Below, piece by piece: positions 1,600-24,110 of a DNA stretch of 28,011 bases (positions within the stretch are counted from its first letter, which is position 1; each line of letters starts with the position of its first letter). The stretch lies in assembly GCF_006345805.1 (NCBI RefSeq), contig NW_021833549.1:1-28011 (forward strand), in the 5' to 3' direction. Source of the stretch: Octopus sinensis (taxonomy: Eukaryota). Under the pieces are notes generated by a model that was given only the letters and a program-made list of their open reading frames with translations, was not told the DNA's origin and searched no databases. A program made the translations under genes and the position numbers.

Positions 1600-2000
1600 A
1601 TTTAATTAGACGAAAGCGATTGTATAACATCTTTTAAGTTTCCTTTTAAAGCCTTCTGATTCATAGCTCTTGGACGTATTCGCCTTTGTTGTCCCAAATA
1701 CATTTTCGATAGGATTTAAGTCAGGTGAATAAGGAGGTAAAAACAAATACTAAACACTATGTGTTTCGAAAAAATTAACAAAATTTGAAGAATGATGAAA
1801 TTTAACATTATCTAAAATTATCACAGAATCATCAGTGAAAATTCCTTTTGTACAACATTCATTGATAAACTCAGTAAAAATAATTGTGCTGTACGCACCA
1901 TCAATTATTTTAGAAAGTTCTATTCCCATTATGGATATTATTGAACACAACGATATATTTTTTCCCTTTGATGCAGGTTGATATAGAATCGGATCATGAT
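1600..2000 (-). mobile_element. Tc1/IS630-like (DDE_3) transposase fragment
   Basis: Reads VIILDNVKFHHS...SV*YLFLPPYSPDLNPIENVFGTTK, the DDE_3 motif set, with an in-frame stop. Confidence 0.9.
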
Positions 2001-2055
2001 TTACATTAATATAAAAAAGAATGAAATAAGAATCAACAACCAAAAGCACAACAAC

Positions 2056-2255
2056 ACAAGTTGCATCCCAAATCAGGGACTTGCCTTTCCTGGAAGGGAA
2101 GGTAGTCATCCAGGACGCTTTCCAGCACTCCGACCGAGACCGACTGGCTCTAGAGTGGAGGGGAAACCTGCCGACTCTAGTGCCTTTTTGATGACGTCAT
2201 TGAGGTGAGTGTGGCGAGGAATTCTGCCAGCACTCTTCTTGTACGATGAATATGC
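2056..2255 (-). mobile_element. CRE-like non-LTR retrotransposon RLE-domain fragment (copy a)
   Basis: [41 protein letters not shown], then frameshift to TTFPSRKGKSLIWDATC (RH, RPD, WD motifs). Confidence 0.88.
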
Positions 2256-2374
2256 AAATTTGACAATTAAGTCATTTTCCCTGAACAATTTTGCATCTTC
2301 AATATCATTTTCATCAAGAAAATTCATATATGCATTGTGTGTTATATTTTTTGAATTTGTCTTATATTTTGTGA

Positions 2375-2675
2375 ATTCGTAAAAATTAATAATGGACGCA
2401 TTTTTGAACAATGCCGCCAGTTCTATATCATGTTGTAAATTAATGAGTTCTAGTTGAAACTTTGCAGGCGCATCCTTAATTTCCACGCTGAATGGAGTTG
2501 CGAATATTTTCATTAAAGGAAGGAATTCTTTAAAATTCTAAAAATTAAATTTATATAAATGTACCCCAAAACGTGCTTCAAATTGATTAATGAAATCACC
2601 AATTATGGATATGTTTAACCTTAAGAATGAATAATTGAATTTAAAAATCCTGGGGGCTGCATTTGAGAACCGCTG
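2375..2675 (-). mobile_element. hAT (Buster/Charlie/SPIN-like) remnant: one terminus joined to a C-terminal transposase piece
   Basis: Minus strand starts CAGCGGTTCTCAAA, a SPIN-like end. Then FINQFEARF...[29 protein letters not shown], typical of GTF2IRD2/SPIN transposases. Confidence 0.82.
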
Positions 2676-2872
2676 GTCTAATCCAACCGGCCCCGGGACA
2701 GAAGGGAATTCAGCGGCGTTGAGCGCGCGCTTAACAATATTATTCAAGACAGCATGCCTGGGTATTCAACCGGCACTGAGGCGACAAGAGAGGGGGTGTA
2801 GGCTTCTCCTGTCAATGATTTTACCGCATCTGCACTGATGTGACTGCCAAATCTCGATCCCAATGCGTAGAC
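2676..2872 (-). mobile_element. CRE-like CCHC knuckle plus start of RLE (copy b)
   Basis: CLRIGIEIWQSHQCRCGKIIDRRSLHPLSCRLSAG*IPRHAVLNNIVKRALNAAEFPSVPGPVGLD. Confidence 0.88.
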
Positions 2873-2879
2873 ACAAACC

Positions 2880-3090
2880 AATGTGATTATCTGATTAAAT
2901 CTTTCAACTATCCCCTGACTCTGGGAATTGTTGGGTCGTCCATGAATTTAAACAATTTTGTACTCTTGACGGAGTTTTCTTATATGGTCATTCTCGAATT
3001 CCGTACCATTGTCTGATTGCACGTATTTACAAGGGCTGTGATCCATAAAAATTTCTTCTAATTTATTGGCAGCTTCTCTTCCTTCCACAA
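2880..3090 (-). mobile_element. rve-type integrase core fragment (KRBA2/Ginger2-like)
   Basis: KLEEIFMDHSPCKYVQSDNGTEFENDHIRKLRQEYKIV*IHGRPNNSQSQGIVERFNQ (xSDNGxEF and HGRP..PQSQG.VERxN motifs). Confidence 0.85.
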
Positions 3091-3574
3091 CTTCAAGATG
3101 TTTACGTCGATGTGTTCGTTCAGATTCTCTCTTTTGGTGTGTATATATTGGAATCTATGAAAACTTTTCGTGCTACTTTCATACCAACTTCATATCAACA
3201 TCGTTAGCCTATTTTTTTCGCTTAACCATTTTTTCCGCTCCTTTGTCGGATGATTTTATTATTACACAACGATCTTCTGTTACTTTAAATATCCATTTTG
3301 AATATTTTAGTTCGATCTCTGGATTGATTTCTGTATATTCCAGCTTGGCTAATTTTCTCCCGTTTTTGTGAATAATACTATGTCATTGCCTTCAATAGAA
3401 ATCATTCCATTGGGTAATATTTCAATAATACGATAAATTTGAACGTTCAAATGTTCATTTAAAGCGCTTTACGTGTTTTCTTATTGTTGTCTACATGTAC
3501 TCTTCTAATAACTTTGTCTTCAAATTTAAAAATGGAATGTCATTATTCCACATTTGCTTTTATGATCGTTTTCA

Positions 3575-3930
3575 GTACGAGAATTGACTGGCATGGGCGC
3601 AGAAGCCATAAAGACATTAAAAAGCGTGGGACTCACCACAGGGCCCTGAGGGATCCCCGCGAAGGACTGTTGTGACTTAGAAAAGACTCCCTGATGCCGC
3701 ACGACCTGTCCGCGAAATTCAAGGAACCCTGACAGCCAGCGCCTTAGATACGGAGAAACCCCCACATGGCGAGCGAGCTTCGGATGCCTTGTGCCACACC
3801 GAGTTCGAAGGCCTTTTCAGTGTCAAGACTAACTAACATACCACAACTCTTCTTCTGGAGGGCGCACTTCATCTCAGTGGACACCTTCCACAAGCAGTTC
3901 CATACGAACGACTCTCCCTGAAGCTCCATT
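3575..3930 (-). mobile_element. APE-type (Jockey/I-like) LINE reverse transcriptase internal fragment
   Basis: LVSLDTEKAF, then MGVSPYLRRWLSGFL...AGIPQGPVVSPTLFNVFM (RT motifs), frameshifted. Confidence 0.9.
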
Positions 3931-4339
3931 GGAACTTGAAAGGTGAAAAAAAAGTGGACATCTTACGTGTGAAGGATCTTGAGAGACGGAAAAGTGGTTT
4001 CTCATGTGGAAAATGCTTGATTTTATATAATTCGGCATCAGAAATTAACAAAAGGAAAACGAAGTGCATCGTCGACTAGTGAACGATCCTTGTTAGTCCG
4101 AAAATTCAAATCGACTTTCCCTTGGGATTTCTTGTGAAAAGCAATTCGAACAAGAAACTTGATTTGATGACAATTTGAATTGCATCAAATAAAGTGGTTG
4201 GGCTAATATCGTAGCTCTCATCGACCTGGCCATCGTAACTCTCATTCAACATTAAGTATGATATCTTCAACAGTGTAATGATTTCATTGTCATCAATGAC
4301 TTTTTCTGTTGAAGCATATCTTTTTCAATCATAATTTGG

Positions 4340-4957
4340 TGTATCCCATTATTTTGTGTCAGCATAAGACTAATCAAAACTTGAATAATTCCAACTTTTT
4401 TGACACAATTACTGATAGTTTCTGTTTGAAATTTTCTTAGGCTTCGTTAAATAACAATATTCATCTCTAAGATTAACAAAAAAGACCAATGATTGATCAA
4501 GCGAGTTCATATAATCAACCACTAATTTTTTTGTAATGATGCTTTAGATTTTTTATTATTCCTGATCCATTGATTGAAGATAAGCAGTTGAGTTCTTTGG
4601 AAGCTTTATAACTTCAATGTTTGGAAAATTGTTCTTCAAAATGTGACCTGGCGCCTTATAAAGAAGTAAATAAAATTTTTTGTTATATCGCATTCAAATA
4701 AATAACTGGTCATCCAAGTTTCGGATTTCATAATAATGACGATATTTTACAACATTAAATCTTTGAAACACTTTGATTTCTTGCTGTGCCCAATAACAAA
4801 AGTTGTCATTTTAATTGATCCAGTTCATTAAAACATAAAGCAACAGTTATTCGAACTTTAGATTGTTTTACGGCTTTTCTTTACTTAATAAAATCGTTAT
4901 TGTAGGAAATGCTTGAAAAAAGGTCCTGTTTCATTCATATTTAGTATAACCTCTGGG
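4340..4957 (-). mobile_element. pogo/Tigger (DDE_1) transposase, degenerate fragment
   Basis: Across frames: PEVILNMNETGPFFK; FVIGHSKKSKCFK; KFYLLLYKAPGH...FPNIEVIKLPKNSTAYLQSMDQ. Confidence 0.8.
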
Positions 4958-5099
4958 TCAATTAATCCGAAATTCTATTAATTCTAGCGTTCGGATTGCG
5001 GATTATTGAATTTTCGGAGCATTGAATCAAATTTGGCAGGAAAAAGCTAGAAAATTTATAATTTCAATTAAAAAAATTCGGATTAACAAGGATTGACTG
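4958..5099. mobile_element. Tigger-type MITE-like remnant
   Basis: Right end ttcggattaacaaggattgactg followed by TA (rc CAGTCAATCCTTGTTAATCCGAA); partial inverted left end tcaattaatccgaa; internal ttcggatt repeats. Confidence 0.6.
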
Positions 5100-5234
5100 T
5101 ATGTTGTTTCTGAATAATTAAATAATTCAATCATCTTGCAACGTATATTTGGCCCGGGATATGTCAGATTACAAAAAAAATGCTTGACGGAATACAAGAA
5201 CGTAAAATAATGATAGAATTAGATTAACAAATAC

Positions 5235-5746
5235 TTTTTGTTCTGAAACTAATGTTTTGTGATGATGAGACATTAGTTTAGTCAAATCAATCATGTTCAT
5301 GTTAGGATGCTCACTATGAAATCGGTTATACTCTTCTTTAATGAATAAATTGTAAGCATTTAAAGCAGGCCCTCATTCTATTTATGCTATAGGATAATTT
5401 ACAATTCTTTTGACTACTTTCTTCAAGTTTGAATTGACTTCTGTCAAAAGACTATCTAAGGTCCGGAATTTTCTTGTCTAAAATAATAATAGGCAGTTAT
5501 TAACTCTAGAAATCAGGAGTTCGACTTTTGTCTAATTCATCCGCAGAGTGGCCATCAAAAACAATTTCGTCCTAGTTTATTTGTTTAAGAGACTTTGTAT
5601 AGGAAAGAGGACATTTTAGGTAATTTAGATTTACCGATCAATTAGTACAGAATAGGTATTTTGGTTCATTCTTAAATAAAAAATAGTGATTAAATACAAC
5701 CTGAATCATTTTCTTGTGCTTCTTGATTGCACCGATTGTAAAGCAT
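5235..5746 (-). pseudogene. UBTF: UBF/UBTF-like gene fragment (N-terminal domain plus first HMG box), micro-introns retained, truncated or interrupted after HMG box 1
   Basis: With 1-nt homopolymer corrections reads EWNQNTYSVLIDR...KLPKN...IN(W>TAG)DEIVF, RKFRTLDSLL, LNAYNLFIKEEYNRFHSEHPNMNMIDLTKLMSHHHKTLVSEQK. This is collinear with UBF WSQED..DWEKVAF..RKFRTL..HPEMSNLDLTKILSK. Confidence 0.72.
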
Positions 5747-5844: not shown

Positions 5845-6112
5845 TTGAGAGAAAACAATTAAGTAGGAATGTACAGAGGGGAAATTCTGGGGGGCTAAAG
5901 CACGCACCCTCCTGCGGAAAGTACCGCATGCGTGTTGCCACGGAGAATGGCAATGGACACCCTGCAATAGCCACGAAACCTCGCGTGGCTCTTTCGTCCT
6001 GTGGGCCATTTCCTCCAGATTGTCGCTGATGAAGGCCAAAGTTAGAGGCCTGCAACGCCCGATGTCTCCAAAGCGATGGTACGAATATAAAACGGCGTCC
6101 AAGTACTGTGTC
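5845..6112 (-). mobile_element. CRE-like RLE 3' end (copy c)
   Basis: With frameshifts: ..IALETSGVAGPLTLAFISDNLEEMAHRTKEPREVSWLLQ.VSIAILRGNTHAVLSAGGCVL*. Same subfamily as copy f at 20907. Confidence 0.88.
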
Positions 6113-7140: not shown

Positions 7141-7734
7141 ATTCATGTCAATTCATGAATGGATAAATAAAAACCCGCTGATTTTTGACGTGTGGTTCTA
7201 TTCTGATGAGACAGGTCGGCCATTTTCGGGAAGGACTCAGAGAGATTGCAATTCTCTTGATTTTTCATTAAGTCGAAATACACGATTTTATAAAGAGAAT
7301 AACAAATTATTTTTTAGTGTGTGAAGAATGTAAACGTGGGAAAGTCCCTTTTTAAATATCTAATTTATTAATAAAACTAATAAAATTTAATGCACGTTAT
7401 TAAATAAATTCACATTTTATTGACAGGGGTGGTGAATATTTATGTCTGGTCCATAGTATGTCTGAGTGGTTACTAATTATTTGATAGCGTACAACCTCTT
7501 CATTTGTACAGAGCACTTCTGATAACACTACCAGAAAGTTTCCGACACATACTTTGACTTTGATCGAAGTACTCTATTTAAAAACCGTAAAACTCGACGG
7601 ATACTTTTTTAATCCAGATACAAATTGCTACTATAAGAATGAGACTAAATCTGAAGATGTGAACCCATGGAAGGTCCTAATTTAAAGTCAAAAAACTCTC
7701 ATCTGGGGCACATTGCATTGTGCAGCGTTATAAA

Positions 7735-8222
7735 GTGACGTGTGCAAAAAATTTTTGCTGCTCGAATTCTTCTTAATTTTATTATTGAATCTGAATGAAT
7801 TTTATGGGTAATATGTCTCTTCAGATAATCCAATTTCCATATATCCCTGGTTTCCACTCGCAAAATCACAAGTCGCTTTAGCGTCGCCACATATTTTACA
7901 AACAACTCCGCAGTCTTCGGAAAAACTAAAAATATCACCCAGTTGCACATGTTGGGGAATTTTTGAATCTGTGTTAAGGTTTCGACGTACTCTATCAACC
8001 ATTCCGGCTAAAAGAAGGAGAATTTTTCTTAAGTCTCATATCAATATTATAGACACGTTTTCGTTTTGAAATGAAAATAAGAATATATAAATTCATATAA
8101 AAAATTAAAAAAAATAGCAATTTTTAATATTATACTTTTACTGCGCAGAAAAAAATTTCGCTGCGCAGCAGGGTGCAAACTGCTGCGCGGCCGCGCACGC
8201 GCGCAGCTTAGAGGGAACACTG
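7735..8222 (-). mobile_element. hAT element left end with N-terminal zinc-finger part of the transposase (ZNF862-like)
   Basis: Minus strand begins CAGTGTTCCCTCTAAGCTGCGCG with subterminal CTGCGCAG repeats; downstream VCKICGDAK..FASG / WKLDYLKRHITHKIHSDS. Confidence 0.68.
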
Positions 8223-8659
8223 GTGGAGAGGCCTCAGTCATTAAAATCCGAGGCATTTGGACTCGATACAGCCATATAAGCGGTATGATGGGACTTTCCA
8301 GCTTCGGCACCTCGCTCGTTATCTAGTCCTAAGACCTTCGCGCAGCCGTTAGACACGAATGTCCGGCCTCGATGCCTCCACATTTTTATGGGACTTGCCA
8401 GATTTGGCAAAAATAAATATACTAGACGTAAATTTTTTTAAATAATAAACAAAATATTCAAGATTGAACTGACGAAAAAAGATTTATAAAATAAAATAAT
8501 TTCATATATACTAATCGAATGGGAAAGAAAATAATTCGGAGAGAATATAAATGAAATAATCGTACAATAAATCTGAGCCACCAAGCAATCGGAAGACTTA
8601 CAGGGTGCAAAAATAACTGAACTGAAAATACCAGAAATAAATAAATGGATTTAAAAAAA

Positions 8660-8960
8660 TCCATATGAATGGAGATTAATTAATTGATAAAATGAATACA
8701 AATTCACCTGCAAAATAAACCTTTATCACAGATATTCTACTTTACCAGTAGTCAATTTAATCAATCTCAAACAAATAAAAAACTATTATTAAAATTAAAC
8801 ATTAAAGCACGAAAAAAAAAATAAGAATTAACAACAGAAATGCACCACACAAGAAGAATATACCGCGCTTAGAGGGTGTGAATAATAATCGTATTAATCG
8901 ATAAATTAAAAAATAAATAACATTTATTATCCTCAATCTGTTCGAACTCATCTAGGCTAG
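8660..8960 (+). repeat. Inverted, diverged copy of the AT-rich segment at ~880-1190 (and ~26020-26330)
   Basis: agattaattaattgataaaatgaatacaaattcac.tgcaaaataaac..tttatc..gatatt..ttaccagtagtcaatttaat matches the reverse complement of ~1085-1178; weaker match continues to 8960. Confidence 0.85.
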
Positions 8961-9744
8961 ATCTTTATCCGTCCATAATGCCTATTATGCATTTTTTCTA
9001 CATTTCCAGCATAATAGATTTTTAGGCATTACAAAGTCCACCTTTACCGGGTATAATATATTTTCATAGTACATTTACTAGACCGAAATGTGTGGAATCA
9101 AATTGAAGTTTCTTTTTGGAAGACTGTGGTCTGATGCTGTCATTTCATTAATAAAAGTAAAAGTGATATATCTCAAGAATGACATAGAATGTAAAGGTTT
9201 ATCAACTTCTAACCTACCCCGATACTTTGCTGAAGAGTGGTGCTTTTAAGTAATTTATTTAATGTATCCTCTTATTAATTTTAATCCTTAATTCCTTAGG
9301 TATAAGTCTTTTATAAAAAAACTAAACAAAAAATCAACTAAAAAGAGTCTTGTAGCGCTGATTCTCATTTTCTTTGGTTGTAATTTTGTTTGTACATCCA
9401 AGTATATCTTTTTGTCAATGTTACATTATGGAAAATGACCATTCTACACCTTAGGATTTCTATAAAGGACATCAGGTGTAGGTAGACAGTCCATTGTTGT
9501 TTTGATGAAAGTCAAGACTTTATAAATAAAAAGCATGTTGTAGATATGTACCTGCATGAAAATCTGGTAGGAAAATCTCATACTTTAACTTCACTTAATA
9601 TAAAAATTCTCTTTTTGAGTACGTCCGCTTGTGGTCATAATGAGTTTGCTATGTCTCAGGGTAAGCTAAAAGTGATCATGATGTTAATCAATAGAGGACA
9701 GAGGAAGTTGAAAATATAGAGCGGATCCCAAAGTCCAAACTGAT

Positions 9745-10200
9745 AAAATTCATTCGTTATACCAATCCTACTTTGAAAACGCGGAAACCTGAGGTCTACC
9801 CGCTAAAGAACGGAACAGGCCAACTCCTTCCACAGACAATCAAGACAGCTCCTAGGAGTCTGACGGCAGAAAAAGATGAGCAACAAAAACTGTACGGGAT
9901 TACTCATACATCCCAAATCGAATGGCCAAGAAATGGCAGTTCTTTGGACATATGTTAAAAACATCGCAAATGACTCCAGCTAATCAGGCCATGGAATAAT
10001 ACTTCTGCTTATCAAACAATACAACATATCGAGGCCGACAAAGAACAACATAACCCACCAAGTGAAACCATGAACTCAAAACAATTAAAAGAAAACTGAA
10101 ATCAAATATGAGCTGAACGACCTGAGAGATCTTGCATGAAACAGGGGAGAATGGAAACGACTAACAGAGCGTATCCTAAGTCGCATGGGAAAATAAAATC
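9745..10200 (+). mobile_element. RTE-like LINE 3' fragment (downstream of RT core)
   Basis: Frameshifted VIPILL...FHRQ...LLGV...SN.KLYGITHTSQIEW...PANQAME.YF...RGRQRTT, the typical RTE C-terminal pattern. Confidence 0.7.
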
Positions 10201-10253: not shown

Positions 10254-10721
10254 TTCTGAACAGCATTGTAAAACGCCTACTTGAGGCAACCTGAGTTCCG
10301 TGCCACCTAAATAATTTAATTAATAATAAATATTAATTTTATGAGGCTCGGGAAGATGGGAAGCTGCCAGACGGTGTTTCGCTCTTCCCGTACAAGTGCG
10401 GTAAAGCGATCGTTTGGGACGCGACATGCTTCGACACTTTTGCGTCATCATGTCTTCTTGATCCTCACTCAAAGCTGGAACAGGGTGATAAAAGCGTAGG
10501 CCCGAAAAACCGAAAAATACGGATCCCTCGCTGACAGATTCATTTTTGAACCAGTGTCAGTCGAAACGTCTGGTACTCTTGGACCATCAACTCTTAGTTT
10601 CCTTACCGAGAGAGGCCGCCACCTCGGAAGAATTAGAAACGACCTTGGCAAGCCACACCGAATCTTTGAGCGTATCTCAATAAGGAACAATGTCTCAATT
10701 CTCTCTGCGGGTAGTCTCTAA
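10254..10721 (+). mobile_element. CRE-like RLE 3' fragment (copy d) containing a 33-nt foreign insert
   Basis: LNSIVKRLLEAT*VPCHL[insert]EAREDGKLPDGVSLFPYKCGKAIVWDATCFDTFAS...KYGSLADRFIFEPVSVETSGTLGP...IFERIS..NNVSILSAGSL*. Confidence 0.9.
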
Positions 10722-14550: not shown

Positions 14551-15352
14551 TTTTTATATAAATTTTTGTATTTTAAAATGTTATTATTTAGAGCTGTGTT
14601 AGGTAGTTTAGTTTGTGTAGATTTTTTTTAGTTTTTGTAGACTTTGTTGTCTGTGTAGACTAGATTAAACTGCTTTCAGAGATAAGCAGCTTAAATTACT
14701 TTTTGAGGTGATAATTACTCTCATTTGAGACTAATTTCAGACAAAGAAAGGAGTTTGTTATAGTGTTTGTCTTGATTTTCCGATACGATGTGATTTAATC
14801 TTATAGGCTTCCATTCCAGCTGGCCTTTATTGCTTTTTTTATCCCTACAAAAAACCTTGAAGAAGTTCTCCTTCAAACTTATTTTGAAGACGATGGTAAT
14901 ATTTTGTTTGTTTGAACGCATTTGCACCGAAATAAACACGATTTTATACTCAGTTAGTGCCCGTCAGTCGAGTTCATGAAGATCAATAAGATTTTTTTAT
15001 TGTATGGCGTTATTTCTTTGTGGGGACGCTCGATCAGACACTATCCCATATAAAAAATCTCCTTGCTTAAATTGTTATCCGAGACTATCAAAAGAAAAAA
15101 ACAAGACTATTTAATTGATGATTTCCTGTGTAATGATTTCTACATATAATTTGTTCATTATCAAAAAATCGGTATCATTGTCACCTAGAAAAGTAAAATG
15201 AAAGTTAAGGTACGTTTTATTCAGCAATAATTTTGATATAATTTATTTATTTGTTCTTACAAAAAACAAATTGATATTATCAAATAAACTAAGTTCAAAA
15301 TTTTATCTTCTATTTGATTTATAGATTTTTTTCCAAAATTCTTTAAAAAATA

Positions 15353-17534
15353 CAGTAAACCTTCTCCATAGTGAACCCTCTTTATAGTGAACAGGCCATA
15401 TTAATGCAATCTACAATAACAAATAATAGTAATTCTCATTTATATATTTATTATAAAATGAATACCACGTTTAAAAATGTATAATATCATTTATTTAAAT
15501 ATTTTTGTGTTCACTATTAAAGAATAGTGAACGTCAAATTTTTGTGAACATAAAAATATTAAATTTAATATTTTTACATATATATTTAAAATTCTTTAAA
15601 ATGAACACGCTCTACAGTTGTTAGCATGGTGGAAAATCGATAACGCCTGTCATTTTTTCAACAGAAGGAAATAATCGAATTTTATCATAAAAATAGACAT
15701 TACACACAGCGCGATTTATCCCTTTATTTCAATGTTTCTCTGGGCTGCATAAACAAAATTTTGAAAAATTCTGAAGGAATACTTAATGTTCAAGATGACC
15801 AAAAAAAGAAGAAAATTTACTTGCCCAAGTCTCAACCATTCGACATAGATCTATTTAATGGTTCGTTAAAAAACGATCATTTGGATTTACAATCAATGAA
15901 TATCTTTTGAAGTCCATGTCTCTAAAAATGGCGAAAGTTTGTAATATTCAAGGATTTCAAGCATCAAATGGATGACTTGAGAAATTTAAAAATCGATATT
16001 GCATTGCTTCCCGTGCTTTGTGGGGAAAATCAATTTGTTGAAACCTCTGCGATTGAAAATTTTACAGAAAGCCTCAATAGAAAATTAGAACAATATTGTT
16101 CAAAAAATATTTTTAATTTGGACGAAACTGGATTGTTTTTAAACTTTTGTCGAACAGAACATTAGCTGTTGACTCGGACAAAAATTGTCTAATAAACCGA
16201 TAAAAGAAAGAGTAACTGTTATGTTTTGCGTTAGTATGATGGGAGAAAAACTTGACCCATTTGTTATTGGAAAAGCCAAAAATCCACGCTGCTTTAAAGG
16301 AAGAAGAAATTTAATTAATAATTTACAAGTGGAATACAAATCAAATAAAAAAGCATGGATGACATATGGTTATTTCTCAGAATGGCTCATAGAATTGAAC
16401 AAAAAAATGATTTTGCAAAAAAGAAAAATTCTAATTCTACTTGATAATGCGACTGTACACTCACGTGATTTAGAGTTCAGTAACATCGAACTCTTTTTTT
16501 CCCTCGGGATTCTACCTGTTCGGACACGTTCTCGCTTGGAAATCTCGCTCTGTCCGCCGCCAATCCTGGGGACGCTTCGAGTCAGGCCGAGGACCAAAAG
16601 ATTCTCAAGTACGGCCATCTTTCCAACTCGCTGTTCTTTACTCCAATTGCCGTGGAGTCCTCCGGGATTTTCGGCCCCAAGACACTCCGCTTCCTTCGCT
16701 CGCTCGGCCGACGGATTTCAAGGACAAGCCACGATCCAAGAGAGTATTCTTGGCTCCTGGAACGTCTGTCGATTGCTGTGATCCGAGGGAACGGCTTCGC
16801 CATTCGCGAGGCTGCCGGGTGTCTCGTGAGGCCGGTAGTTAGCTTAGCTATCTTTTCACGTCCTTATTGTTTTGTTTAAATTAATTAATTATAAATACAA
16901 CATCGAAGTTACAACCCCTTGATCAAGGAATAATAAAATCATTCAAAGACAGGTATAGACAACTCCTATGTGCACACTTGATTGAATTTTATACTAATGA
17001 TGACAATGTAGATCACGAAAAAGTTACGGAAAAGTTGAAGAAATTCACTCTATTGAATTGCTTGATATTCATAAATCAAGCTTGGTTAGAAGTGTCGGAA
17101 TTAACAATTACAAATTGTTTCAAGAAAGCATTTGAAAATGCGTTAATACAGAACCTGACAAAAATAGAAGAAATAGATGAGGAAAATTTTTTGATTCATG
17201 AAAATGATCAAATTGACGACGAAAACTTTATACAAAACTTTGCGAGAAAACTAAAACACAAGACCAAGTTGAAGAGGAAGATGAAAAAATTTATGTTCCG
17301 ACACTATATGAAGCTAGTGAATATGCGAAGGCGCTTGAATTATGGTTTCTTGAGAATGATTATGAACAAAGAAGAAAAGTATACGAAATACAAAAATTTT
17401 AAGAATTATCAACTAATCATTCTCAAAAAATCACCGATTACATGATTAAAATCACTAAATAATCTTTGTAATTATACTTTAATATTGTTTATTGCTATTT
17501 TGATTCCTTTTGTTCACTATAGACAATAGTGAAC
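15353..17534 (+). mobile_element. Nearly full-length pogo/Tigger DNA transposon (CENP-B HTH plus DDE_1), right TIR lost, interrupted by a CRE insertion
   Basis: TA|CAGTAAACCTTCTCCATAGTGAAC left end with GTGAAC/GTTCACTAT subterminal repeats. FQASNG*LEKFKNR, IFNLDETGLF, KERVTVMFC, VIGKAKNPRCFK, KAWMT, LLDNATVH, TSKLQPLDQGIIKSFK, AWLEV..TITNCFKKA. Confidence 0.93.
16503..16892 (+). mobile_element. 5'-truncated CRE-like insertion (copy e) inside the pogo transposase
   Basis: DSTCSDTF...KILKYGHL..FTPIAVESSGIFGP..DPREYSWLLERLSIAVIRGN plus AT tail; splits NIELFF|PNTTSKLQPLD. Confidence 0.92.
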
Positions 17535-17544
17535 ATGATGTCTT

Positions 17545-17980
17545 GACGTGGACATTTTGTTCATTATAGAGAGGGTGAATTTTATTGCTGCGAAGATTGA
17601 CATCCCAACCAATATTTATTTAATTGACTGCATTTGTGTTGAGACGTGTGATGCAAGTTCAATTTGTCAAACAATTGATGATTGCTTACGAAATTACCAA
17701 GTTGAGAGAAAAAACTTTGTTTTGTTGTTAACTGATGCTATACCGTATATGATGTCAGCCGCAACTAGCATACGTATATTTTATCCGAATATGATTCACC
17801 TTACTTGTTTCGCTCATTTACTTCATAATTGTGCACTAAAAGTGCGTTCTCACTATCAAACATCGATTTCTTAATATCATCGATGAAAATTGTGGACTCT
17901 TAAAAATAAATCGTCAAAAGCTTTTCGGAATTTGGTCTACCTCCAGATGTTACCTCCATGGAAAGGGGAATTTGGTTACA
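17545..17980 (+). mobile_element. hAT-like transposase internal fragment (DUF659/CGGBP-type)
   Basis: ICQTIDDCL..FVLLLTDAIPYMMSAA..FYPNMIHLTCFAHLLHNCALKVR (first catalytic D and CxxH motif). Confidence 0.82.
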
Positions 17981-17984
17981 GTAA

Positions 17985-18300
17985 ATGAAAAAATAAATTC
18001 TGCTGTATATATCAACATTTTAAGAATAATTTGTGGAAATCGGCAGATAAAATTGGGCTAAATCGTTTTATTTGCCAACAAGATTTGGACCCCTGTCATA
18101 ATTCACGGAGAACAAAACAATTTTTGGATGATAAAAAAATTGAATTATTAAATTGGGCACCACAATCACCAGATTTGAACCCAATTGAACATGTCTGCAT
18201 AGTAAAAAGGATTTATGCGAAAATATCATAAAAATTTGGGACTAAATACCAACGGAATTTGTGAGAAAATTAACTGAAAGCATGCCAAGAAGAAGCATTG
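17985..18300 (+). mobile_element. Tc1 (DD34E) transposase internal fragment
   Basis: NLWKSADKIGLNRFICQQDLDPCHNSRRTKQFL..LNWAPQSPDLNPIEH. Confidence 0.9.
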
Positions 18301-18369
18301 AGCTTTATAAGGCACACGGAGGACACATTAATTATTAATCATTTGACCTGTATAAAGAAGATCAATTTT

Positions 18370-18767
18370 GTAAAAGCCTTCCTTTGGAACTGTGGGAGAA
18401 CTTATCCGCCAGGGGTAGAGACCCTTTACAAGCAGTATATCGAGCCAACAATAGGCTATGCATGTGCTGCTTGGGGCTGTAACCTGGCGGCAAAAATCGA
18501 AAAAATTCAAGAAAGATCTATCAACCTACTGAAGAACCACACCGATAGGGAAATTGTCCATAGAACACTGGAGTCTCTCGTAGAGGCAAATGGGGGGATC
18601 GTGGAAATGGACCACAAACCATTCACCGTACATACAGAAAGTGTGTGTGGTCACGGTCGGAACATCGTGAAAAGATGGCTCGACTGTTGAGAAGTGTCGG
18701 AATCACCTGAACGTGTTAGTTAATGGTTAAGACGGTGATTTTGTTTGGCTTAAATAATAATAATAAT
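18370..18767 (+). mobile_element. APE-type LINE 3' end with (TAA)n tail
   Basis: LYKQYIEPTIGYACAAW..KIEKIQERSINL post-RT motif; ends in taataataataat. Confidence 0.72.
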
Positions 18768-18989
18768 CCGGTTTTTTTACACAGAAAAAATTTAATATAG
18801 TCAGTTTAGCTGTACAAAAAGATTATTGAAAAATTATAAAAAGAAAAGTTACGAAAATTATCATTATAAATTAAAAAAAATCTAAAATTAAAAACAGAAT
18901 ATCAAAAAAACTAAGCATTCGAAAATCCGGTTTTTTATTACATGGAGTGTGATTCGCCTTTTGTGGGGGCGCAAAAATCCAGTTATTGG

Positions 18990-19140
18990 ATTAATGAAAA
19001 AAGAATCATTCGCTCATCCCCCCGCGACTATCGTCAGTCCGGGGCGGCCTTCTCTGTCGACCTCACTTTCCCGTTTTGCCCTTCTCACTATCTGTGGGGA
19101 TCTGGAATCTAATCCCGGGCCAAAGAGACGTATATCAATT
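18990..19140 (+). mobile_element. Probable LINE ORF N-terminal fragment with 2A-like motif
   Basis: SLSRFALLTICGDLESNPGP, with DLESNPGP at 19099-19122. Confidence 0.55.
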
Positions 19141-20556
19141 CTCCAACTAATTCTCCAGCTCCACCCTTATCTCACTGCAATGGAGAAGGGGATAATTATG
19201 AAGAAGATTGCTTTGGTACCCTCGCGTGCCAACACACTGGCCGAGGTAATAAAGACGATGAGAACCGTTGAGCATCCGCAAATTCAGATGTGCGGCCAGG
19301 TCCCTTTACAATCAATCGATGAATACAATTTCATACAGTAAAATATAAAAAAAATATAGAAATCGTCGAGAATAGGGTTTTGTAGAAAAGTTAAAAATAT
19401 GTATTGAATAGTTAAAATGTAAAAAAGATTAAATTATTGCAAAAATAAGACCAATACAATTACAAAATATCAAATATTATAAGAAATTCTGTAAGCCAAC
19501 AATATATTTAATCAATTTTAATACAAAATTAACCATTAATACAAGAAAATAAATTAAAAAATAAAACAATAAGCAAAACAAAACAAAATATAAACAATAA
19601 CGTGCGAATATTTTATTATAATAAATTAAAATTTTTTTCTTGACTTTATTTAATAATCATATAACTATCAAAATATATCAAATAATCATATAACTCGGAC
19701 CACAAGGGTATTTTCAAATTTTGAGGATTGTTGGAATCACCTAATATTATCCTAATTAACTGTTGGTGATTCTTAGGTTAAATAAATAAAAAAATAAAAT
19801 AAAACTAACTAGGATTGACGAGTGATGCCGTCATCAGTGATACAACTGCGGAACCAAATGTCTACTTCAGCCACACTCGAAAAGAAAAAATAGATGTAGC
19901 AGAGACACATGTCTTCGTTCGGGTCGTCTTCCTTTGGATTAGTTAGTTTCCTAATAACATGTTCTCTCTCTGTTTTGATCTTATGTGGCTGTTAACATTC
20001 CGTTCTCATCTTGCGGCAGGGGTTGTTGTTGTTAACTATCAAAGAAATAATGGCTTACGAAACGAAGTTTAGTAACTTGATACTAACTTGATAGTAATTT
20101 GTTTGCACTATAGAGTAATTGCCAGAAAAAAATTGTTGAAAATTTGGCTTCTCAGTGTGATAAACATTTTAATCAGCAATTATCTCAGGAGACACAATAA
20201 AGTTGTTTCCAAACGCTGTATTTTTTGATGTTTGTTCTTTCAGACCGTTTGTTGAAGTTTTGCTTTCAATTTATTTCTTTTATAATTTATTAATTATAAA
20301 AATCAGAAGTCTTAGAAAATTTTATTCTACTATTTCATGATGAGATATTCAAATAGAATGCTTTCCGTAACTAGTTTATTTTGTTTAAAGTAAAGACTGT
20401 CTAACTACAGCAAAGGCACGCTAGCATGTGATTACGTACTACCAAACCGAGATCAATTACGAGTTTTATTAAAACGATCTAAATATAATTATATAATAGA
20501 GTTGATAACATTACTTGCGGGGGGCCCTTTGTTACTAGTCTCGAGCAGGTTAAATG

Positions 20557-20628
20557 TCCCCGATAGTATAATGGTTAGTATGCCGCGTTGTCATCGCGGT
20601 GGCCCGGGTTCGATTCCCGGTCGGGGAG
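20557..20628 (+). tRNA. tRNA-Asp (GTC), intronless
   Basis: Acceptor TCCCCGA/TCGGGGA; anticodon arm CCGCG-TTGTCAT-CGCGG; T arm CCGGG-TTCGATT-CCCGG. Confidence 0.96.
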
Positions 20629-20634
20629 TTTTTT
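20629..20634 (+). terminator. Pol III oligo-T terminator of tRNA-Asp
   Basis: TTTTTT directly after the discriminator base. Confidence 0.8.
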
Positions 20635-20906
20635 GCAACCCTTATTTTAAATTCGCAGATTTTTTAAAAGGCAGAGTTTTACATTGCCTAAATTTCATTA
20701 TATGTGTTATTAATATCTAAATCTGATTTGAACTTAAAGATATATTCAAGGATTTTGTACAGCTGAGTCTATTCGCGAGGTGCAAGCTCCGCAAATTGAT
20801 TGGCAGCATAGGTGTACTCTTCTTTGTCAGCCTACACTCTTTGTCTGTATCTCGAAAGATAAATTTTTAAAAAAAAAGTATTAAAATCACAAACGTAATT
20901 ATTATC

Positions 20907-21240
20907 GATTCATTCCCTTCATCGCCTATCATGTCATCTGCCACATCCCCCGGGTCTGCTGCGGAAAAAGCTGAAACGGCTAAAATAAAAAAATAAAAAG
21001 AACTCGGACGCCTTTCGAGACATCGGGCATCGCCGGGCCTCTAACCTCGGCTTTTATCAGCGACATTGGAAGAAAATTGGCCCATAGGACGAAAGAGCCA
21101 CTCGAGGTTTTGTGGCTATTGCAGAGGATATCCATCGCCATATTCCGTGGAAACACGCACGCGGTACTTACCGCAGGAGGGCGCGTGCTTTAGCCCCTCG
21201 GAGATTCCCTTTTGTTCATTCCTAACTTACTTTTTATATA
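20907..21240 (+). mobile_element. CRE-like RLE 3' end (copy f), same subfamily as copy c
   Basis: DSFPSS..SATSPGSAAEKAETAKIKK*..ETSGIAGPLTSAFISDIGRKLAHRTKEPLEVLWLLQRISIAIFRGNTHAVLTAGGRVL*. Confidence 0.88.
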
Positions 21241-21537
21241 ACAATTTTACGCATCAAAAAAAGAAAAATTATATGAATCTTCCTCTTTTTCACAGCGGAA
21301 CAGTCGACTGATATGGTCTTTATTTTCTCTCGTTCATCCATAGTGCTTGGAGGTTTATACGACATGCATTGTTCAACGACATCGTGAAATGAGCTATGAG
21401 GTCGTATTTCTTTCACTACTCCAACCTTTTCGGGTCGACCGTGTGGATAGGCAACATTCTGATGGGATGAGCATTTTCTTTCTCAAGTGTGAAAAAACGA
21501 TATTATTTGTATTATAAATTAAATTTTTGCCACGAAA

Positions 21538-21669
21538 GATCCCAACGAGTCGATCAGACTCTTTCAAAGGATCTCATTGGCCATCATGCGCGGGAATTGC
21601 CAGTCGATTCGCTGCGCATTTTAATTCTTTTCGTTTATTAACAATAAGTTTGTCATTAAAAAAAAAAAA
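21538..21669 (+). mobile_element. Very short CRE-like 3' end with poly(A) (copy g)
   Basis: DPNESIRLFQRISLAIMRGNCQSI then an A-run at ~21657-21669. Confidence 0.75.
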
Positions 21670-21707
21670 TTATAAATTAATTTAATGAAATTCAGTCAGA
21701 TCTAATT

Positions 21708-22220
21708 TTACACGCTCTATCGTGTAGACGCAGTGCTGGCCGCATTCCGCGTCACGCGGCTCTTAACGATCTTATCAGGAGAGCTCTGGAAGTGGCCGGA
21801 ATCCCCTCCCTGCTTGAACCCTCTGGGATCGATCGGGGGGACGGAAAAAGGCCTGACGGGATCACTGAGTTTCCCTTCAACCGGGAGAAGCCTCTTACCT
21901 GGGATGCCACGTGTTTGGACTCTTTCTCGCCTCAGAACCTGCTGATGTCCGCATCCGCCCCTGGATCTATTGTCACAACCGCGGAATGCAAAAAGATGCG
22001 GAAGTACTCCTCACTTACGGAGAAGTTCCAATTCCTTCCATTCGCGGTTGAGACTTCCGGTTCCTTAGACAGTAAGGCAATCAGCTTCGTTCAGGAGATC
22101 GGGTCCCGCATGTTTGCTATCACAGGCGACGCCCGCGAATCAAGATGGTTTTTCGAGCGGATATCTTTTTCGATAGTACGCTCTAATTCTTTCTCGATCG
22201 TGTCGGCTTCCCGTCCATGA
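21708..22220 (+). mobile_element. CRE-like RLE domain, uninterrupted reading frame but no start codon (copy h)
   Basis: [65 protein letters not shown]; 171 codons to the stop. Confidence 0.93.
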
Positions 22221-22333
22221 AGCTTTCGAACACTTGACCGAATTCTTTTTTTCGTAATAAACAAAATTAATCCGGACAAAAAAATTTGACTTAAACTCTT
22301 CAAAATTTTTAAAATGCTTTCTGAAATTCTTTC

Positions 22334-22470
22334 TTAAAAAAGTTTAAAAATGGGAAGGTTCTTTGTTTCCTTTATTGTCTTAGATTGGAAAAACGCATTT
22401 GAGGCACGTTTTATTCAGCAATAATTTTGATATAATTTTTTTTGTATTTATTTGTTCTTACAAAAACATC
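22334..22470 (+). pseudogene. DDX55: Duplicated 3' end of DDX55 (last intron, last exon and flank)
   Basis: About 95 bp closely matching 14459-14555, including the 26-nt intron; stop is TAA rather than TGA. Confidence 0.85.
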
Positions 22471-22509
22471 ACTATCTATTTTTATTGAGAACGCTTCTTA
22501 GAGCGTTTT

Positions 22510-22905
22510 ATAATTTTAAGACCAAGAAGGGACCCGGCTTCTTTCAGGCCGATTTCCCTGTTATGCTCGATGTCGAAAATCCTGGAAGACTGGTTCTTGG
22601 CAGAATAGAAGCTTTCTTACCCCAAAGACATTTTCAACATGGTGTAAGAAGGCGAAGTCCACGTCTTTGTACCTTCAATCCTTGTCAAACTTCATCTGTA
22701 CCGGTTTTGCCAGCAAACCGAGGCACCAAAAGACCGTGCTCTGCTCCGTCGACATCCATAAAGCCTTCGATTCCGTCTCGAGGAAGCTCCTCTCAAGGAA
22801 GATATTCCAATCCAACTTTCCTCTGAAGCTAAAAATATTGATTACCAACTTCCTAAGTGGACGAAGGGGAAGGGTGTGCCTCGGTGGTCTGAAATCCAAA
22901 TCTCG
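22510..22905 (+). mobile_element. Jockey/I-like LINE reverse transcriptase internal fragment
   Basis: KTKKGPG..LPQRHFQHG..; TVLCSVDIHKAFDSVSRKLL..ITNFLSGRRGRV. Confidence 0.85.
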
Positions 22906-23167
22906 ATTAGACAATTTCAATTAGACAATTTTGACAATTAAAAAAAGTAAAAAATAATAATTCTCGTTTTATTATTCTAATTTTGTTTTGTGTTTTATTT
23001 CTAGTTGATTTATAGATTTTTCGAGTTTACAAACTGTTTCATTTGTCTTAAAAGTAGCAGTGTTTTCATTATTAAGCATAGTATTTGTCTAAGAGTAGCT
23101 GGTTAGTGTAATTTGCAATTTAATTGAGCATTAATTTCTTTAAATGTAATTGTTATTTACTAGAAGT

Positions 23168-23350
23168 TAACAAAGCCATCCATCCGAAGTGAACCCCGCC
23201 AACATTATTGACGTTGCGTTGCCTCTCACGATAGCAACGGAGATCACTGAAGAAGCCACCGACCGGGTCTCACGTGTGTCGTGGCTTTTTAATGTAGCTA
23301 AGCGTCCAAGCTTCTTCAGGAAGCAAAGCGATTTCCCACTTATTCCTCCA
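23168..23350 (-). mobile_element. CRE-like 3' end (copy i); the only minus-strand TE piece in the right block
   Basis: GGISGKSLCFLKKLGRLATLKSHDTRE...ISVAIVRGNATSIMLAG. Confidence 0.75.
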
Positions 23351-23419
23351 TATTAGAATTATAAAAAGTAATTATTTAAAAATACAATTCAAATTGATTC
23401 AGAGGATAAATATAACTAT

Positions 23420-24110
23420 GTTTACCAACATCGCTTGGCTTGTTTATTGGCTGCCTTGCAACCATATTCGGGGACTTGGTTGACCGCCATCCCTATGGGA
23501 ACCGCAAACCTTATTGGACGACGATTTCCTAAGGATCGGTGTCTCATTGCGCCTGGGGGTAAACGTATGCCGAGAACACCGGTGCCGCTGTGGATCGACC
23601 GTTGACCCCTTTGGATTGCACCCATTATCGTGTCAGAGAAGCTCTGGACGCTTTCCCCGACACGCTGCCCTGAACGACATAGTCAAGCGGACTTTTGAAA
23701 CTGCCGGATTCCCATCACAGTTGGAACCTGTCGGCCTGGTTCGGGAGGATGGTAAACGTCCTGACGGCCTAACGACTTTCCACTTCAAAGATGGCAAGTC
23801 GCTCATCAATACACAACTTGCACGGACACCTTCTCCGCCGGAAACATCTTTACGTCAGCCGGAGAGCCGACTCCGCAGCCAACCTTGCGGAAACATTAAA
23901 AGTCAAGAAATATAGTGCATTATTGCACCGTTATATCTTTGCCCCGATCGTATTGGAGACGTCGAGAGTACTCGATTACAGAACTAAAAAATTCCTTATT
24001 AAACTGGGGGATTTGGCAAGCAGAAGTAGAAAATGATCGTCGGGAACGGACATGGCTTTTCCAGCGCATATCAATAGCCATCTTGCGTGGGAATTGCCAT
24101 TGCTGCTAAT
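23420..24110 (+). mobile_element. Longest CRE-like fragment: CCHC knuckle plus RLE (copy j)
   Basis: [87 protein letters not shown]. Confidence 0.93.

What the first reader, a model, noticed from the sequence alone, without database searches (positions are those of the whole stretch)
1600..24110. Strand-polarised archive of transposon fragments (candidate uni-strand piRNA-cluster-like locus)
Seen: between 1.6 and 8.2 kb all 9 recognisable TE pieces are sense on the minus strand (Tc1, CRE x3, hAT x2, integrase, LINE RT, pogo). Between 9.7 and 24.1 kb 13 of 14 are sense on plus (RTE, pogo, hAT, Tc1, LINE x3, CRE x6 of 7). Two-sided binomial values are about 0.004 and 0.002, although the breakpoint was chosen post hoc and neighbours may not be independent. 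Established: DNA transposons have no intrinsic orientation preference, and co-oriented short fragments of many unrelated families are the hallmark of uni-strand piRNA clusters such as Drosophila flamenco. Inference: this may be a selected TE-silencing locus wrapped around essential housekeeping genes, or a replication- or transcription-biased capture process.
Basis: partly seen in the sequence, partly recalled or inferred. Interest (0 to 1): 0.8.

Follow-up and report, generated by a model that had tools for sequence, protein, structure and literature searches.

The report
Strand-polarised transposon debris in parasite contig
The transposon fragments really do point one way on the left and the other way on the right, more than chance or this genome's background explains. 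The contig comes from a tiny-intron parasite co-assembled with a mollusc host, and whether it is a piRNA-type silencing locus cannot be decided without RNA data.

Summary
Observation confirmed. An unbiased tblastn with sense-defined TE proteins reproduces nine minus-sense pieces at 1.3-8.2 kb. It gives twelve plus-sense pieces against one minus at 10.3-24.1 kb. Only the 'RTE' piece could not be verified. The exact p, corrected for the post hoc breakpoint, is 4e-4, and 0.004-0.02 under conservative merging. Elsewhere in the genome, neighbouring TEs of different families are co-oriented about 50% of the time (34:35), against 15:2 in the window. The pieces are not internal duplicates.

The context changes. 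The contig belongs to a second organism with 20-33 nt introns, a dicyemid-type parasite in a mollusc assembly. PSMD14 and a DDX55-like helicase are intact in two better sister contigs. The window's frameshifts look like homopolymer errors.

The two arms converge on a 24%-GC spacer. In a sister contig the minus arm runs four more elements. A PIWI-clade gene exists in the parasite contigs.

Best reading, at about 0.37, is a small two-arm piRNA-cluster-type locus. Neutral accumulation plus chance is nearly as likely. Small RNA and stranded RNA data would decide.

The parts
1..2888 (.). Left end of the contig, repeated at 25155-28010 (97% identity). The contig is a circular permutation of the locus seen in the sister contigs.
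1322..2007 (-). Short Tc1/mariner-type element (DDE_3). It has 21-nt terminal repeats at 1323-1426. The family has 91-96% copies with the same ends.
2053..2246 (-). CRE/SLACS-like non-LTR fragment (core of the restriction-like endonuclease domain).
2238..2537 (-). hAT-type C-terminal fragment. Copies elsewhere lie in 154-226 aa open frames.
2625..2891 (-). CRE-like fragment.
2882..3154 (-). Integrase (rve-type) fragment.
   Evidence: library label confirmed
3338..3962 (-). LINE reverse-transcriptase fragment ('LINE2'). The segment 6125-6905 belongs to the same family, because the two are adjacent in C9729.
4559..4812 (-). pogo/Tigger DDE fragment.
5172..5372 (-). Weak HMG-box match. It is unclear whether this is a gene or a fragment.
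5956..6060 (-). CRE-like fragment. It is an inverted homologue of 21012-21235.
7705..8224 (-). Young hAT-like non-autonomous element (zinc-finger N-terminus; label by eye). Many 97-98% copies exist. The window's rearrangement junction at 7705/7706 lies about 30 bp inside it.
9695..10003 (+). Unverified: no copies outside this locus and no family match.
10256..10718 (+). CRE-like fragment.
10915..12080 (-). PSMD14/Rpn11 gene with 8 GT..AG introns (seven of 20-33 nt, one of 75 nt). It is intact in the sister contigs. The window copy has 8 slips of 1-2 nt.
12412..14500 (+). DDX55/SPB4-like DEAD-box helicase gene with 12 GT..AG introns (24-33, 53 and about 85 nt). It is intact in the sister contigs. 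The window copy has 8 slips.
15317..17576 (+). Full pogo element. It is a recent insertion, absent from the C11156 copy, and the family is 95-98% identical across copies.
16506..16892 (+). CRE 3' fragment nested in the pogo element. Other pogo copies lack it.
17575..17859 (+). hAT fragment (weak DUF659 match).
17989..18228 (+). Tc1 fragment (weak DDE_3 match; DDE motif visible by eye).
18274..19338 (+). LINE1-family pieces: the RT C-terminal part at 18274-18687 and a piece with a 2A-like GDLESNPGP motif at 18892-19338.
20557..20628 (+). tRNA-Asp(GTC).
20886..22217 (+). Three CRE-like fragments (20886-21178, 21300-21618, 21708-22217). The last is 95% identical at protein level to intact copies.
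22520..22921 (+). LINE1-family RT fragment. Copies elsewhere lie in open frames of up to 944 aa.
23182..23349 (-). The only wrong-strand piece: a CRE C-terminal fragment.
23195..24100 (+). CRE-like fragment.
24101..26467 (.). AT-rich spacer (23-28% GC) between the plus arm and the minus arm. The two arms' coding senses converge on it.

Best explanation
The window is a lower-quality haplotig of a gene-bearing, TE-rich chromosomal region. The region belongs to a second organism co-assembled with the 2.7 Gb mollusc host: an animal with 20-33 nt introns, that is, a dicyemid-type parasite.

Two intact housekeeping genes sit head to head, about 330 bp apart. They are PSMD14 on the minus strand and a DDX55-like helicase on the plus strand. 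Downstream of the helicase lies an interval of about 19 kb without recognised protein-coding genes. It is filled with truncated copies of at least 9 TE families.

The coding senses of these copies form two arms that converge on a 2.4 kb spacer of about 24% GC. The plus arm runs from 10.3 to 24.1 kb. The minus arm runs from 1.3 to 8.2 kb, which follows the spacer in the true order of the locus, and it continues about 9 kb further in contig C12442.

Proposed mechanism: long transcripts start in or near the spacer and run outward. They are therefore antisense to the TEs of both arms. Insertions in that orientation are kept because the antisense RNA feeds a PIWI pathway, and because sense insertions would terminate the precursor. 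This would make the locus a small bidirectional piRNA-cluster-type source locus.

Shown: the polarity, the independence of the pieces, that the pattern is unusual against the genome background, that the genes are real, and that a PIWI-clade gene exists. Inferred and not shown: the transcription, the small RNAs and the selection.
For: - Polarity was confirmed with an unbiased search. The exact change-point-corrected p is 3.8e-4.
- It is reproduced in two better sister contigs.
- Cross-family adjacent pairs in the window are 15 same: 2 opposite. The genome baseline is 34:35. Fisher p = 0.005.
- DNA transposons follow the arms as well as retroelements do (Tc1, hAT and pogo on each side). This argues for retention after insertion rather than an insertion mechanism.
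- The pieces come from families with intact, young copies: CRE ORFs up to 1051 aa, pogo at 97-98%, the hAT-like element at 98%. A cluster that records active elements would look like this.
- In C12442 the next four elements beyond the window's edge are also minus. This gives 12 consecutive minus elements over 25.3-38.9 kb.
- Compact Piwi-domain loci lie on parasite-type contigs. One carries the PIWI-clade RDGVGDGQ motif.
- TE fragments enriched in one orientation are the structural signature of flamenco (79% antisense; PMC10495008). Fragments in antisense orientation (endogenous viral elements) likewise mark mosquito core clusters (bioRxiv 10.1101/2022.08.22.504762).
Against: - There are no small-RNA or transcript data of any kind.
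- The arms are about 14 kb each. Flamenco spans hundreds of kb.
- Two intact housekeeping genes lie inside the plus arm. An outward transcript would run antisense through the helicase gene.
- The TEs of the plus arm are sense relative to the upstream DDX55-like gene. This is the opposite of the mosquito read-through model.
- Beyond the arms the bias fades. The right flank is 9 minus: 4 plus. The left flank of C11156 is 4 minus: 1 plus, which is the wrong sign for a continuing plus arm.
- Insertions private to single haplotypes are only 6 concordant: 2 discordant.
- If abutting mosaics are counted as single events (n about 10), p rises to about 0.02.
- Dicyemida show a strong reduction of Tudor genes (PMC12147562).
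- No paper in the library mentions both Dicyema and Piwi.
Confidence: 0.37

Rival explanations
1. Neutral TE accumulation. The region is an ordinary TE-rich intergenic stretch of a genome that is about 49% repeats. The two-block pattern is a chance outcome, inflated by non-independence. Neighbours of the same family tend to be co-oriented in this genome, and abutting fragments may be single composite events.
For: - Same-family neighbours are co-oriented genome-wide, 32:10, p = 9e-4. Ten of the 21 pieces are CRE.
- The significance falls to 0.004-0.02 under merging (arithmetic).
- The flanks are only weakly biased and private insertions are 6:2.
- Real genes of mixed orientation surround the region.
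- The D. japonicum genome is 48.9% repeats (PMC6736024).
Against: - The 12 non-CRE pieces alone form a perfect two-block pattern (p = 0.006).
- The cross-family baseline is 50%.
- The CRE pieces match different subfamilies best and share no DNA similarity except one inverted pair. Duplication therefore does not explain their co-orientation.
- Four further minus elements follow outside the window.
Confidence: 0.33
2. Orientation-dependent purifying selection tied to ordinary transcription, not to piRNAs. One version: insertions are tolerated only when they point away from, or along, the read-through of the divergent essential gene pair. Another version: they lie antisense within an unannotated long non-coding transcript.
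For: - The plus-arm TEs are co-directional with DDX55 and lie immediately downstream of it. Most minus TEs lie on the PSMD14 side in the window's own arrangement.
- Genes are compact and intergenic distances short, so TE promoters and terminators could interfere with them (PMC6736024).
Against: - The switch point (8.2-10.2 kb) is not at the shared promoter (12.08-12.41 kb). CRE 10256-10718 points into PSMD14.
- In the sister contigs the minus arm is not next to PSMD14 at all. It lies 13 kb downstream of DDX55.
- Most fragments are truncated and lack promoters.
- Other gene-TE neighbours show no rule. For example, a pogo element converges on SMU1 in L054.
Confidence: 0.14
3. Insertion-time bias. 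Replication-fork direction or another strand-asymmetric process sets the orientation. The spacer or the 8-10 kb region would then mark a fork switch.
For: - The pattern has two sharp switches. One lies in an AT-rich spacer.
- L1 insertions in human cells favour the lagging-strand template (own knowledge).
Against: - Cut-and-paste DNA transposons (Tc1, hAT, pogo; 6 of 6) follow the arms as strictly as the retroelements do.
- Known replication-linked biases are weak (own knowledge).
- The cross-family baseline elsewhere is 50%.
Confidence: 0.06
4. Composite retro-mosaics. Reverse-transcriptase template switching, or capture of cDNA during repair, joined sense fragments of several TE mRNAs. Each contiguous mosaic would then be one event with a built-in polarity.
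For: - Short internal coding fragments abut one another in the same sense with little spacer: integrase-CRE-hAT-CRE at 3154-2053 on the minus strand, and hAT-Tc1-LINE at 17575-19338 on the plus strand with the LINE part at the 3' side.
- One ORF runs in frame from a hAT piece into a CRE piece.
Against: - The Tc1 piece (1322-2007), the hAT-like element (7706-8224) and the pogo element are DNA-level elements with family-typical ends.
- The CRE pieces in the left mosaic are internal and do not reach the 3' end that priming would require.
- No such junction recurs elsewhere.
Confidence: 0.05

Closest known systems
Drosophila flamenco (uni-strand piRNA cluster)
   Same: A dense mosaic of truncated fragments from many TE families, including currently active ones. 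Strong enrichment of one orientation. It lies next to protein-coding genes. The locus is polymorphic or duplicated between haplotypes (PMC10495008).
   Different: Flamenco is hundreds of kb long, has one strand and one promoter, is about 79% antisense and consists mostly of Ty3/mdg4 LTR elements (PMC10495008). Here there are two arms of about 14 kb of opposite polarity, mostly non-LTR and DNA-transposon pieces, and intact housekeeping genes inside one arm. No RNA evidence exists.
Mosquito core piRNA clusters driven by read-through from upstream genes
   Same: A fragment-rich stretch that begins directly downstream of a conserved housekeeping-type gene, with captured fragments in a preferred orientation (bioRxiv 10.1101/2022.08.22.504762).
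   Different: In the mosquito clusters the captured elements are antisense to the read-through. Here the plus-arm TEs are sense relative to the DDX55-like gene. Read-through from that gene would therefore give sense RNA, not antisense.
Bidirectional (divergently transcribed) piRNA clusters, such as mammalian pachytene clusters (own knowledge)
   Same: Two arms of opposite strand polarity flank a short central region. If transcription leaves the spacer, both arms are read antisense to their TEs.
   Different: Pachytene clusters are TE-poor and are defined by small RNAs and an A-MYB promoter. Here the central region is a 24%-GC spacer of unknown function and nothing is known about transcription.
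Ordinary TE nests or graveyards in repeat-rich genomes
   Same: Nested, truncated, multi-family debris with polymorphic insertions between haplotypes.
   Different: Such nests are expected to have random orientation. That is what this genome shows elsewhere for cross-family neighbours (34:35).

Membership tests
piRNA cluster (uni-strand or bidirectional) | Dense 24-31 nt small RNAs with 1U bias mapping to the locus. | not testable with these tools
piRNA cluster (uni-strand or bidirectional) | Rich in fragments of many TE families, including active ones. | tested here: met
   At least 9 families and 21 verified pieces in about 22 kb. The families have intact or young copies elsewhere.
piRNA cluster (uni-strand or bidirectional) | TE fragments strongly biased to one orientation per transcription unit. 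| tested here: met
   9 of 9 minus and 12 of 13 plus. Corrected p = 3.8e-4. The genome's cross-family baseline is about 50%.
piRNA cluster (uni-strand or bidirectional) | Fragments lie antisense to a long single-stranded precursor made from a defined promoter. | not testable with these tools
   The direction of transcription is unknown. Relative to the upstream DDX55-like gene the plus arm is sense.
piRNA cluster (uni-strand or bidirectional) | The organism has PIWI-clade Argonaute proteins. | tested here: met
   Compact Piwi-domain loci lie on parasite-type contigs. The RDGVGDGQ motif is at C9497:513867-513890. Assigning the clade from that motif rests on my own knowledge, and no full gene model could be read.
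piRNA cluster (uni-strand or bidirectional) | Extended size (tens to hundreds of kb) with polarity kept throughout. | tested here: inconclusive
   The arms are about 14 kb each. The minus run extends to 12 elements over 13.5 kb in C12442 and then becomes mixed. The outer flanks are 9:4 and 4:1.
CRE/SLACS clade of non-LTR retrotransposons (for the 'CRE' pieces) | A single ORF with a reverse transcriptase followed by a C-terminal CCHC plus restriction-like endonuclease domain. | tested here: met
   Intact ORFs of 856-1051 aa with this layout. Public relatives carry RVT_1, and one is named 'Retrotransposable element SLACS protein'.
CRE/SLACS clade of non-LTR retrotransposons (for the 'CRE' pieces) | Site-specific insertion, classically into spliced-leader genes. 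| not tested
   Only an incidental observation: copies on C12878 sit in one orientation inside a short tandem repeat of about 70 nt.
Dicyemid (mesozoan) nuclear genome | Spliceosomal introns mostly under 30 nt (median about 26-27 nt). Among animals this is otherwise known only in myxobolid myxozoans. | tested here: met
   Of 20 GT..AG introns in two genes, 17 are 20-33 nt and the median is about 26. Literature: PMC13644364, PMC6543705, PMC6736024.
Dicyemid (mesozoan) nuclear genome | The host is a cephalopod. | tested here: met
   The chromosome-size contigs C5 and C28 carry multi-unit molluscan haemocyanin genes. The host's own PSMD14 on C23 has an intron of about 925 bp where the window has one of 25 nt. 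A cephalopod rather than another mollusc is inferred from the 2.7 Gb genome size (own knowledge).
Dicyemid (mesozoan) nuclear genome | Sequence-level match to a known Dicyema genome. | not testable with these tools

The most novel reading that the evidence does not exclude
The two converging arms are the halves of a divergently transcribed piRNA source locus of a dicyemid. This would be the first such locus for that phylum. In addition, its unit of about 25.1 kb would be excised or amplified as a circle or tandem repeat. That would link TE defence to the programmed DNA rearrangements and extrachromosomal circles reported for dicyemids. The basis for the second part is that the window contig is a circular permutation of the sister contigs, with a junction found in no other copy.
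Probability: 0.05. Interest if true: 0.75.

Novelty: new member of a known kind. Interest (0 to 1): 0.38.

Why it matters
If the arms do produce strand-specific small RNAs, this would be the first candidate piRNA source locus in Dicyemida. That phylum has about 5,000 genes and strongly reduced germline gene sets, yet about 49% repeats. The question of whether extreme parasites keep RNA-guided transposon control would then become directly testable.

Two practical points hold regardless. First, unplaced contigs of this mollusc assembly contain a second animal genome. Its TE families and genes (PSMD14, DDX55, NOG1, SMU1 and Argonautes) could be mistaken for host sequence or for horizontal transfer. 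Second, the window's apparent pseudogenes are an artefact of low consensus quality combined with 20-30 nt introns.

Tried and rejected
1. 'Housekeeping genes are processed pseudogenes.' This was my first reading, based on frame hops. I rejected it. A spliced protein-to-DNA alignment shows 0 frameshifts and only GT..AG mini-introns in both sister contigs. The window has 4-6 times more indel events, mostly 1-nt homopolymer slips, than the sisters have against each other.

2. 'A 25 kb macrosatellite or tandem array.' The sister contigs carry one pass of the locus with collinear flanks beyond it. Only the window has the 7705/7706 junction.

3. 'The unit is a giant mobile element.' The boundary is not a transposon terminus. 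It lies about 30 bp inside a hAT-like copy.

4. 'The arms are an inverted duplication, or the fragments are co-duplicated blocks.' The self-BLAST shows only four small repeats.

5. Sampling about 1 Mb of the genome for a de novo TE library and a run-length null. I replaced it with strand tables from four searches and with loci fetched earlier.

6. A chimeric query of the unverified pieces against public proteins gave nothing.

7. Six-frame Pfam scanning was too insensitive on its own. It found only about 8 of the pieces.

8. Base-skew profiles simply follow TE orientation and carry no independent information.

Full report
WHAT THE WINDOW IS

The window is the whole contig C10020 (28,011 bp) of a 2.72 Gb assembly with 13,516 contigs. 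Its first 2.9 kb recur at 25,155-28,010 with 97% identity.

Two other unplaced contigs carry the same locus: C11156 (45.9 kb) and C12442 (66.9 kb). They differ from the window by about 2% in substitutions. In both, the order is window 7706 -> 25154 -> 1 -> 7705, and the two are collinear with each other well beyond that point. The window is therefore a circular permutation of the locus. Its 7705/7706 junction is unique to it. That junction lies about 30 bp inside a young hAT-like element, not at a transposon end. Whether it is a tandem duplication, a circle or a chimeric join is unresolved.

A SECOND ORGANISM

At first I read the PSMD14 and DDX55-like copies as pseudogenes because they hop between frames. 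That reading was wrong.

- A spliced protein-to-DNA alignment shows PSMD14 in C11156 and C12442 with no frameshift. It is 310 aa long, 71% identical to the human protein, and has 8 GT..AG introns, seven of 20-33 nt and one of 75 nt.
- The DDX55/SPB4-like helicase reads with no frameshift and 12 GT..AG introns of 24-32, 53 and 87 nt.
- The window has the same introns plus 8 slips of 1-2 nt in each gene.
- Across the whole contig the window has 4-6 times more indel events, mostly 1-nt homopolymer slips, than the sister contigs have against each other. Low consensus quality is the simplest explanation.

Among animals, introns under 30 nt are known only from myxobolid myxozoans and from Dicyema (PMC13644364; median 27 nt in Dicyema sp., PMC6543705). 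D. japonicum has 36.7% GC, 48.9% repeats and 6.2 introns per gene (PMC6736024).

The chromosome-size contigs belong to a mollusc. C5 and C28 carry multi-unit molluscan haemocyanin genes. C23 carries a different PSMD14 with an intron of about 925 bp at the position where the window has one of 25 nt.

Every top hit of the five TE families I searched lies on unplaced contigs and none on the chromosome-size contigs. The window is thus most likely dicyemid DNA co-assembled with a cephalopod-size host.

CHECKING THE OBSERVATION

Six-frame Pfam scans found only the strongest pieces. I therefore took intact ORFs from other copies in the same genome:

- CRE-like ORFs of 856-1051 aa, whose public relatives include a 'SLACS protein';
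- pogo, integrase, hAT, Tc1, two LINE types and a Helitron helicase, with labels checked.

I searched both strands with them. Nine of nine pieces are minus between 1.3 and 8.2 kb. Twelve pieces are plus and one is minus between 10.3 and 24.1 kb. The coding sense of the LINE and hAT-C pieces is backed by many copies lying in long open frames. The 'RTE' at 9.7 kb has no relatives outside the locus.

The exact probability of a pattern this clean, allowing any breakpoint and either polarity, is:

- 3.8e-4 for n=21;
- 5.9e-3 for the 12 non-CRE pieces alone;
- 3.9e-3 after merging same-family neighbours;
- about 0.02 if abutting mosaics are counted once (arithmetic).

IS IT SPECIAL IN THIS GENOME?

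Two substitutes were used.

- From the strand tables of four searches (414 elements on 176 contigs), adjacent elements of different families within 30 kb are 23 same: 26 opposite. Same-family neighbours are 32:10.
- Around 38 CRE- or pogo-centred loci, cross-family neighbours are 11:9.

The window's cross-family adjacent pairs are 15:2, giving Fisher p = 0.005. Long mixed-family same-strand runs are therefore not the rule here. Same-family co-orientation is the rule, which tempers the weight of the ten CRE pieces.

The pieces are not internal duplicates, and their junctions do not recur elsewhere.

ANATOMY IN THE TRUE ORDER OF THE LOCUS

The order is:

1. PSMD14 (minus) and the DDX55-like gene (plus), head to head;
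2. a plus arm;
3. a spacer of about 24% GC (window 24.1-26.5 kb);
4. a minus arm.

The coding senses converge on the spacer.

In C12442 the four elements beyond the window's edge are also minus: a LINE RT N-terminus, an integrase, an IS1595-like transposase and a CRE. This gives 12 consecutive minus elements over 25.3-38.9 kb. Further out the pattern is mixed. The right flank as a whole is 9 minus: 4 plus. The left flank of C11156 is 4 minus: 1 plus.

Real genes of mixed orientation follow: a WD40-like ORF (plus strand, identified by eye only), an S10 carboxypeptidase (minus) and NOG1 (plus).

Insertions private to one haplotype are 6 concordant: 2 discordant.

MECHANISM

DNA transposons obey the arms as strictly as retroelements do. 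A bias acting after insertion, through retention, is therefore more plausible than an insertional bias.

The reading that fits best is transcription running outward from the spacer, antisense to both arms, feeding a PIWI pathway. A PIWI-clade signature is present in a compact Piwi-domain locus on a parasite-type contig. One-orientation fragment mosaics are the known signature of flamenco (PMC10495008). Mosquito core clusters likewise hold endogenous viral fragments in antisense orientation (bioRxiv 10.1101/2022.08.22.504762).

The points against this reading are:

- the arms are short;
- intact genes lie inside the plus arm;
- the TEs are sense relative to the upstream helicase gene;
- the bias fades in the flanks;
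- Dicyemida have reduced Tudor gene sets (PMC12147562);
- there are no RNA data at all.

I put this reading at about 0.37 and neutral accumulation plus chance at about 0.33. The remainder is shared among other transcription-linked selection, insertion-time bias and composite retro-mosaics.

VERDICT

The interpretation survives the three refutation tests that could be run, but it remains unproven. If true, it would be a new member of a known kind in an unstudied phylum. The by-products are solid: a second genome in the assembly, mini-intron genes, and a low-quality haplotig.

Noticed in passing
Whole window; G000 unplaced contigs versus C1-C30: The contig belongs to a second animal with 20-33 nt introns (dicyemid-type) co-assembled with a mollusc host. 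All top hits of five TE families lie on unplaced contigs. The host chromosomes carry molluscan haemocyanin genes and an intron-rich PSMD14 of their own.
   Followed up: yes
Whole window versus C11156 and C12442: The window contig has 4-6 times more indel events, mostly 1-nt homopolymer slips, than its two sister contigs have against each other. These produce 8 false frameshifts in each of two genes that are otherwise intact.
   Followed up: yes
window 7705/7706, and 1-2888 versus 25155-28010: The contig is a circular permutation of the locus. Its junction is found in no other copy and lies about 30 bp inside a hAT-like element. It could be a tandem duplication, a circle or a chimeric join. Dicyemids are reported to make extrachromosomal circles, though much smaller ones (PMC6543705).
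   Followed up: partly
window 10303-10342 and 11462-11501: An exact 40-nt direct repeat. One copy is the 3' part of the unusually long (75 nt) PSMD14 intron plus 5 exon bases. The other copy lies 1.16 kb away inside the CRE-like hit. Both are present in the sister contig as well.
   Followed up: no
window 18892-19338 (+): A LINE-family fragment encodes a 2A-like self-cleaving peptide motif (GDLESNPGP).
   Followed up: no
L048, L030, L038, L041 (C12878) and the tables: CRE-like elements sit head to tail inside a short tandem repeat of about 70 nt (period estimated by eye). Same-family TE neighbours are co-oriented genome-wide (32:10). Pairs with identical scores recur at spacings of about 24-29 kb on several contigs, which suggests segmental or tandem duplications.
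   Followed up: partly
public relatives of L048:1425-4577: Several public CRE-like proteins carry an N-terminal ubiquitin-specific protease domain (PF00443) fused to the reverse transcriptase. Some are annotated as host ubiquitin hydrolases in a barnacle.
   Followed up: no
G000:C9497:513456-513968, C8702:422118-422819, C12468:143639-144649 and 159513-160016, C7758:66767-67039: Four or five compact Argonaute-family (Piwi-domain) loci lie on parasite-type contigs. The one on C9497 carries the PIWI-clade RDGVGDGQ motif.
   Followed up: partly
window 887-1224 and 8625-8954: An AT-rich repeat of about 340 bp occurs in inverted orientation at these two sites (75% identity). Further copies lie in both sister contigs. 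Its nature is unknown.
   Followed up: no
window 14459-14573, 15205-15265, 22334-22466: The last coding bases and 3' flank of the DDX55-like gene recur as direct repeats (87-91% identity). One copy lies just before the pogo insertion and another just after a CRE fragment 8 kb downstream.
   Followed up: no
window 5594-5683 and 20557-20628: ARAGORN calls a 90-nt tRNA-Leu that Rfam does not support. The tRNA-Asp(GTC) is supported by both tools and lies on the plus strand inside the plus arm.
   Followed up: no
L054 (C8320:232500-238500), minus strand, 4278-5634: A nearly uninterrupted SMU1 (WD40) gene lies next to a pogo copy. This is another compact housekeeping gene of the parasite-type compartment.
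   Followed up: no
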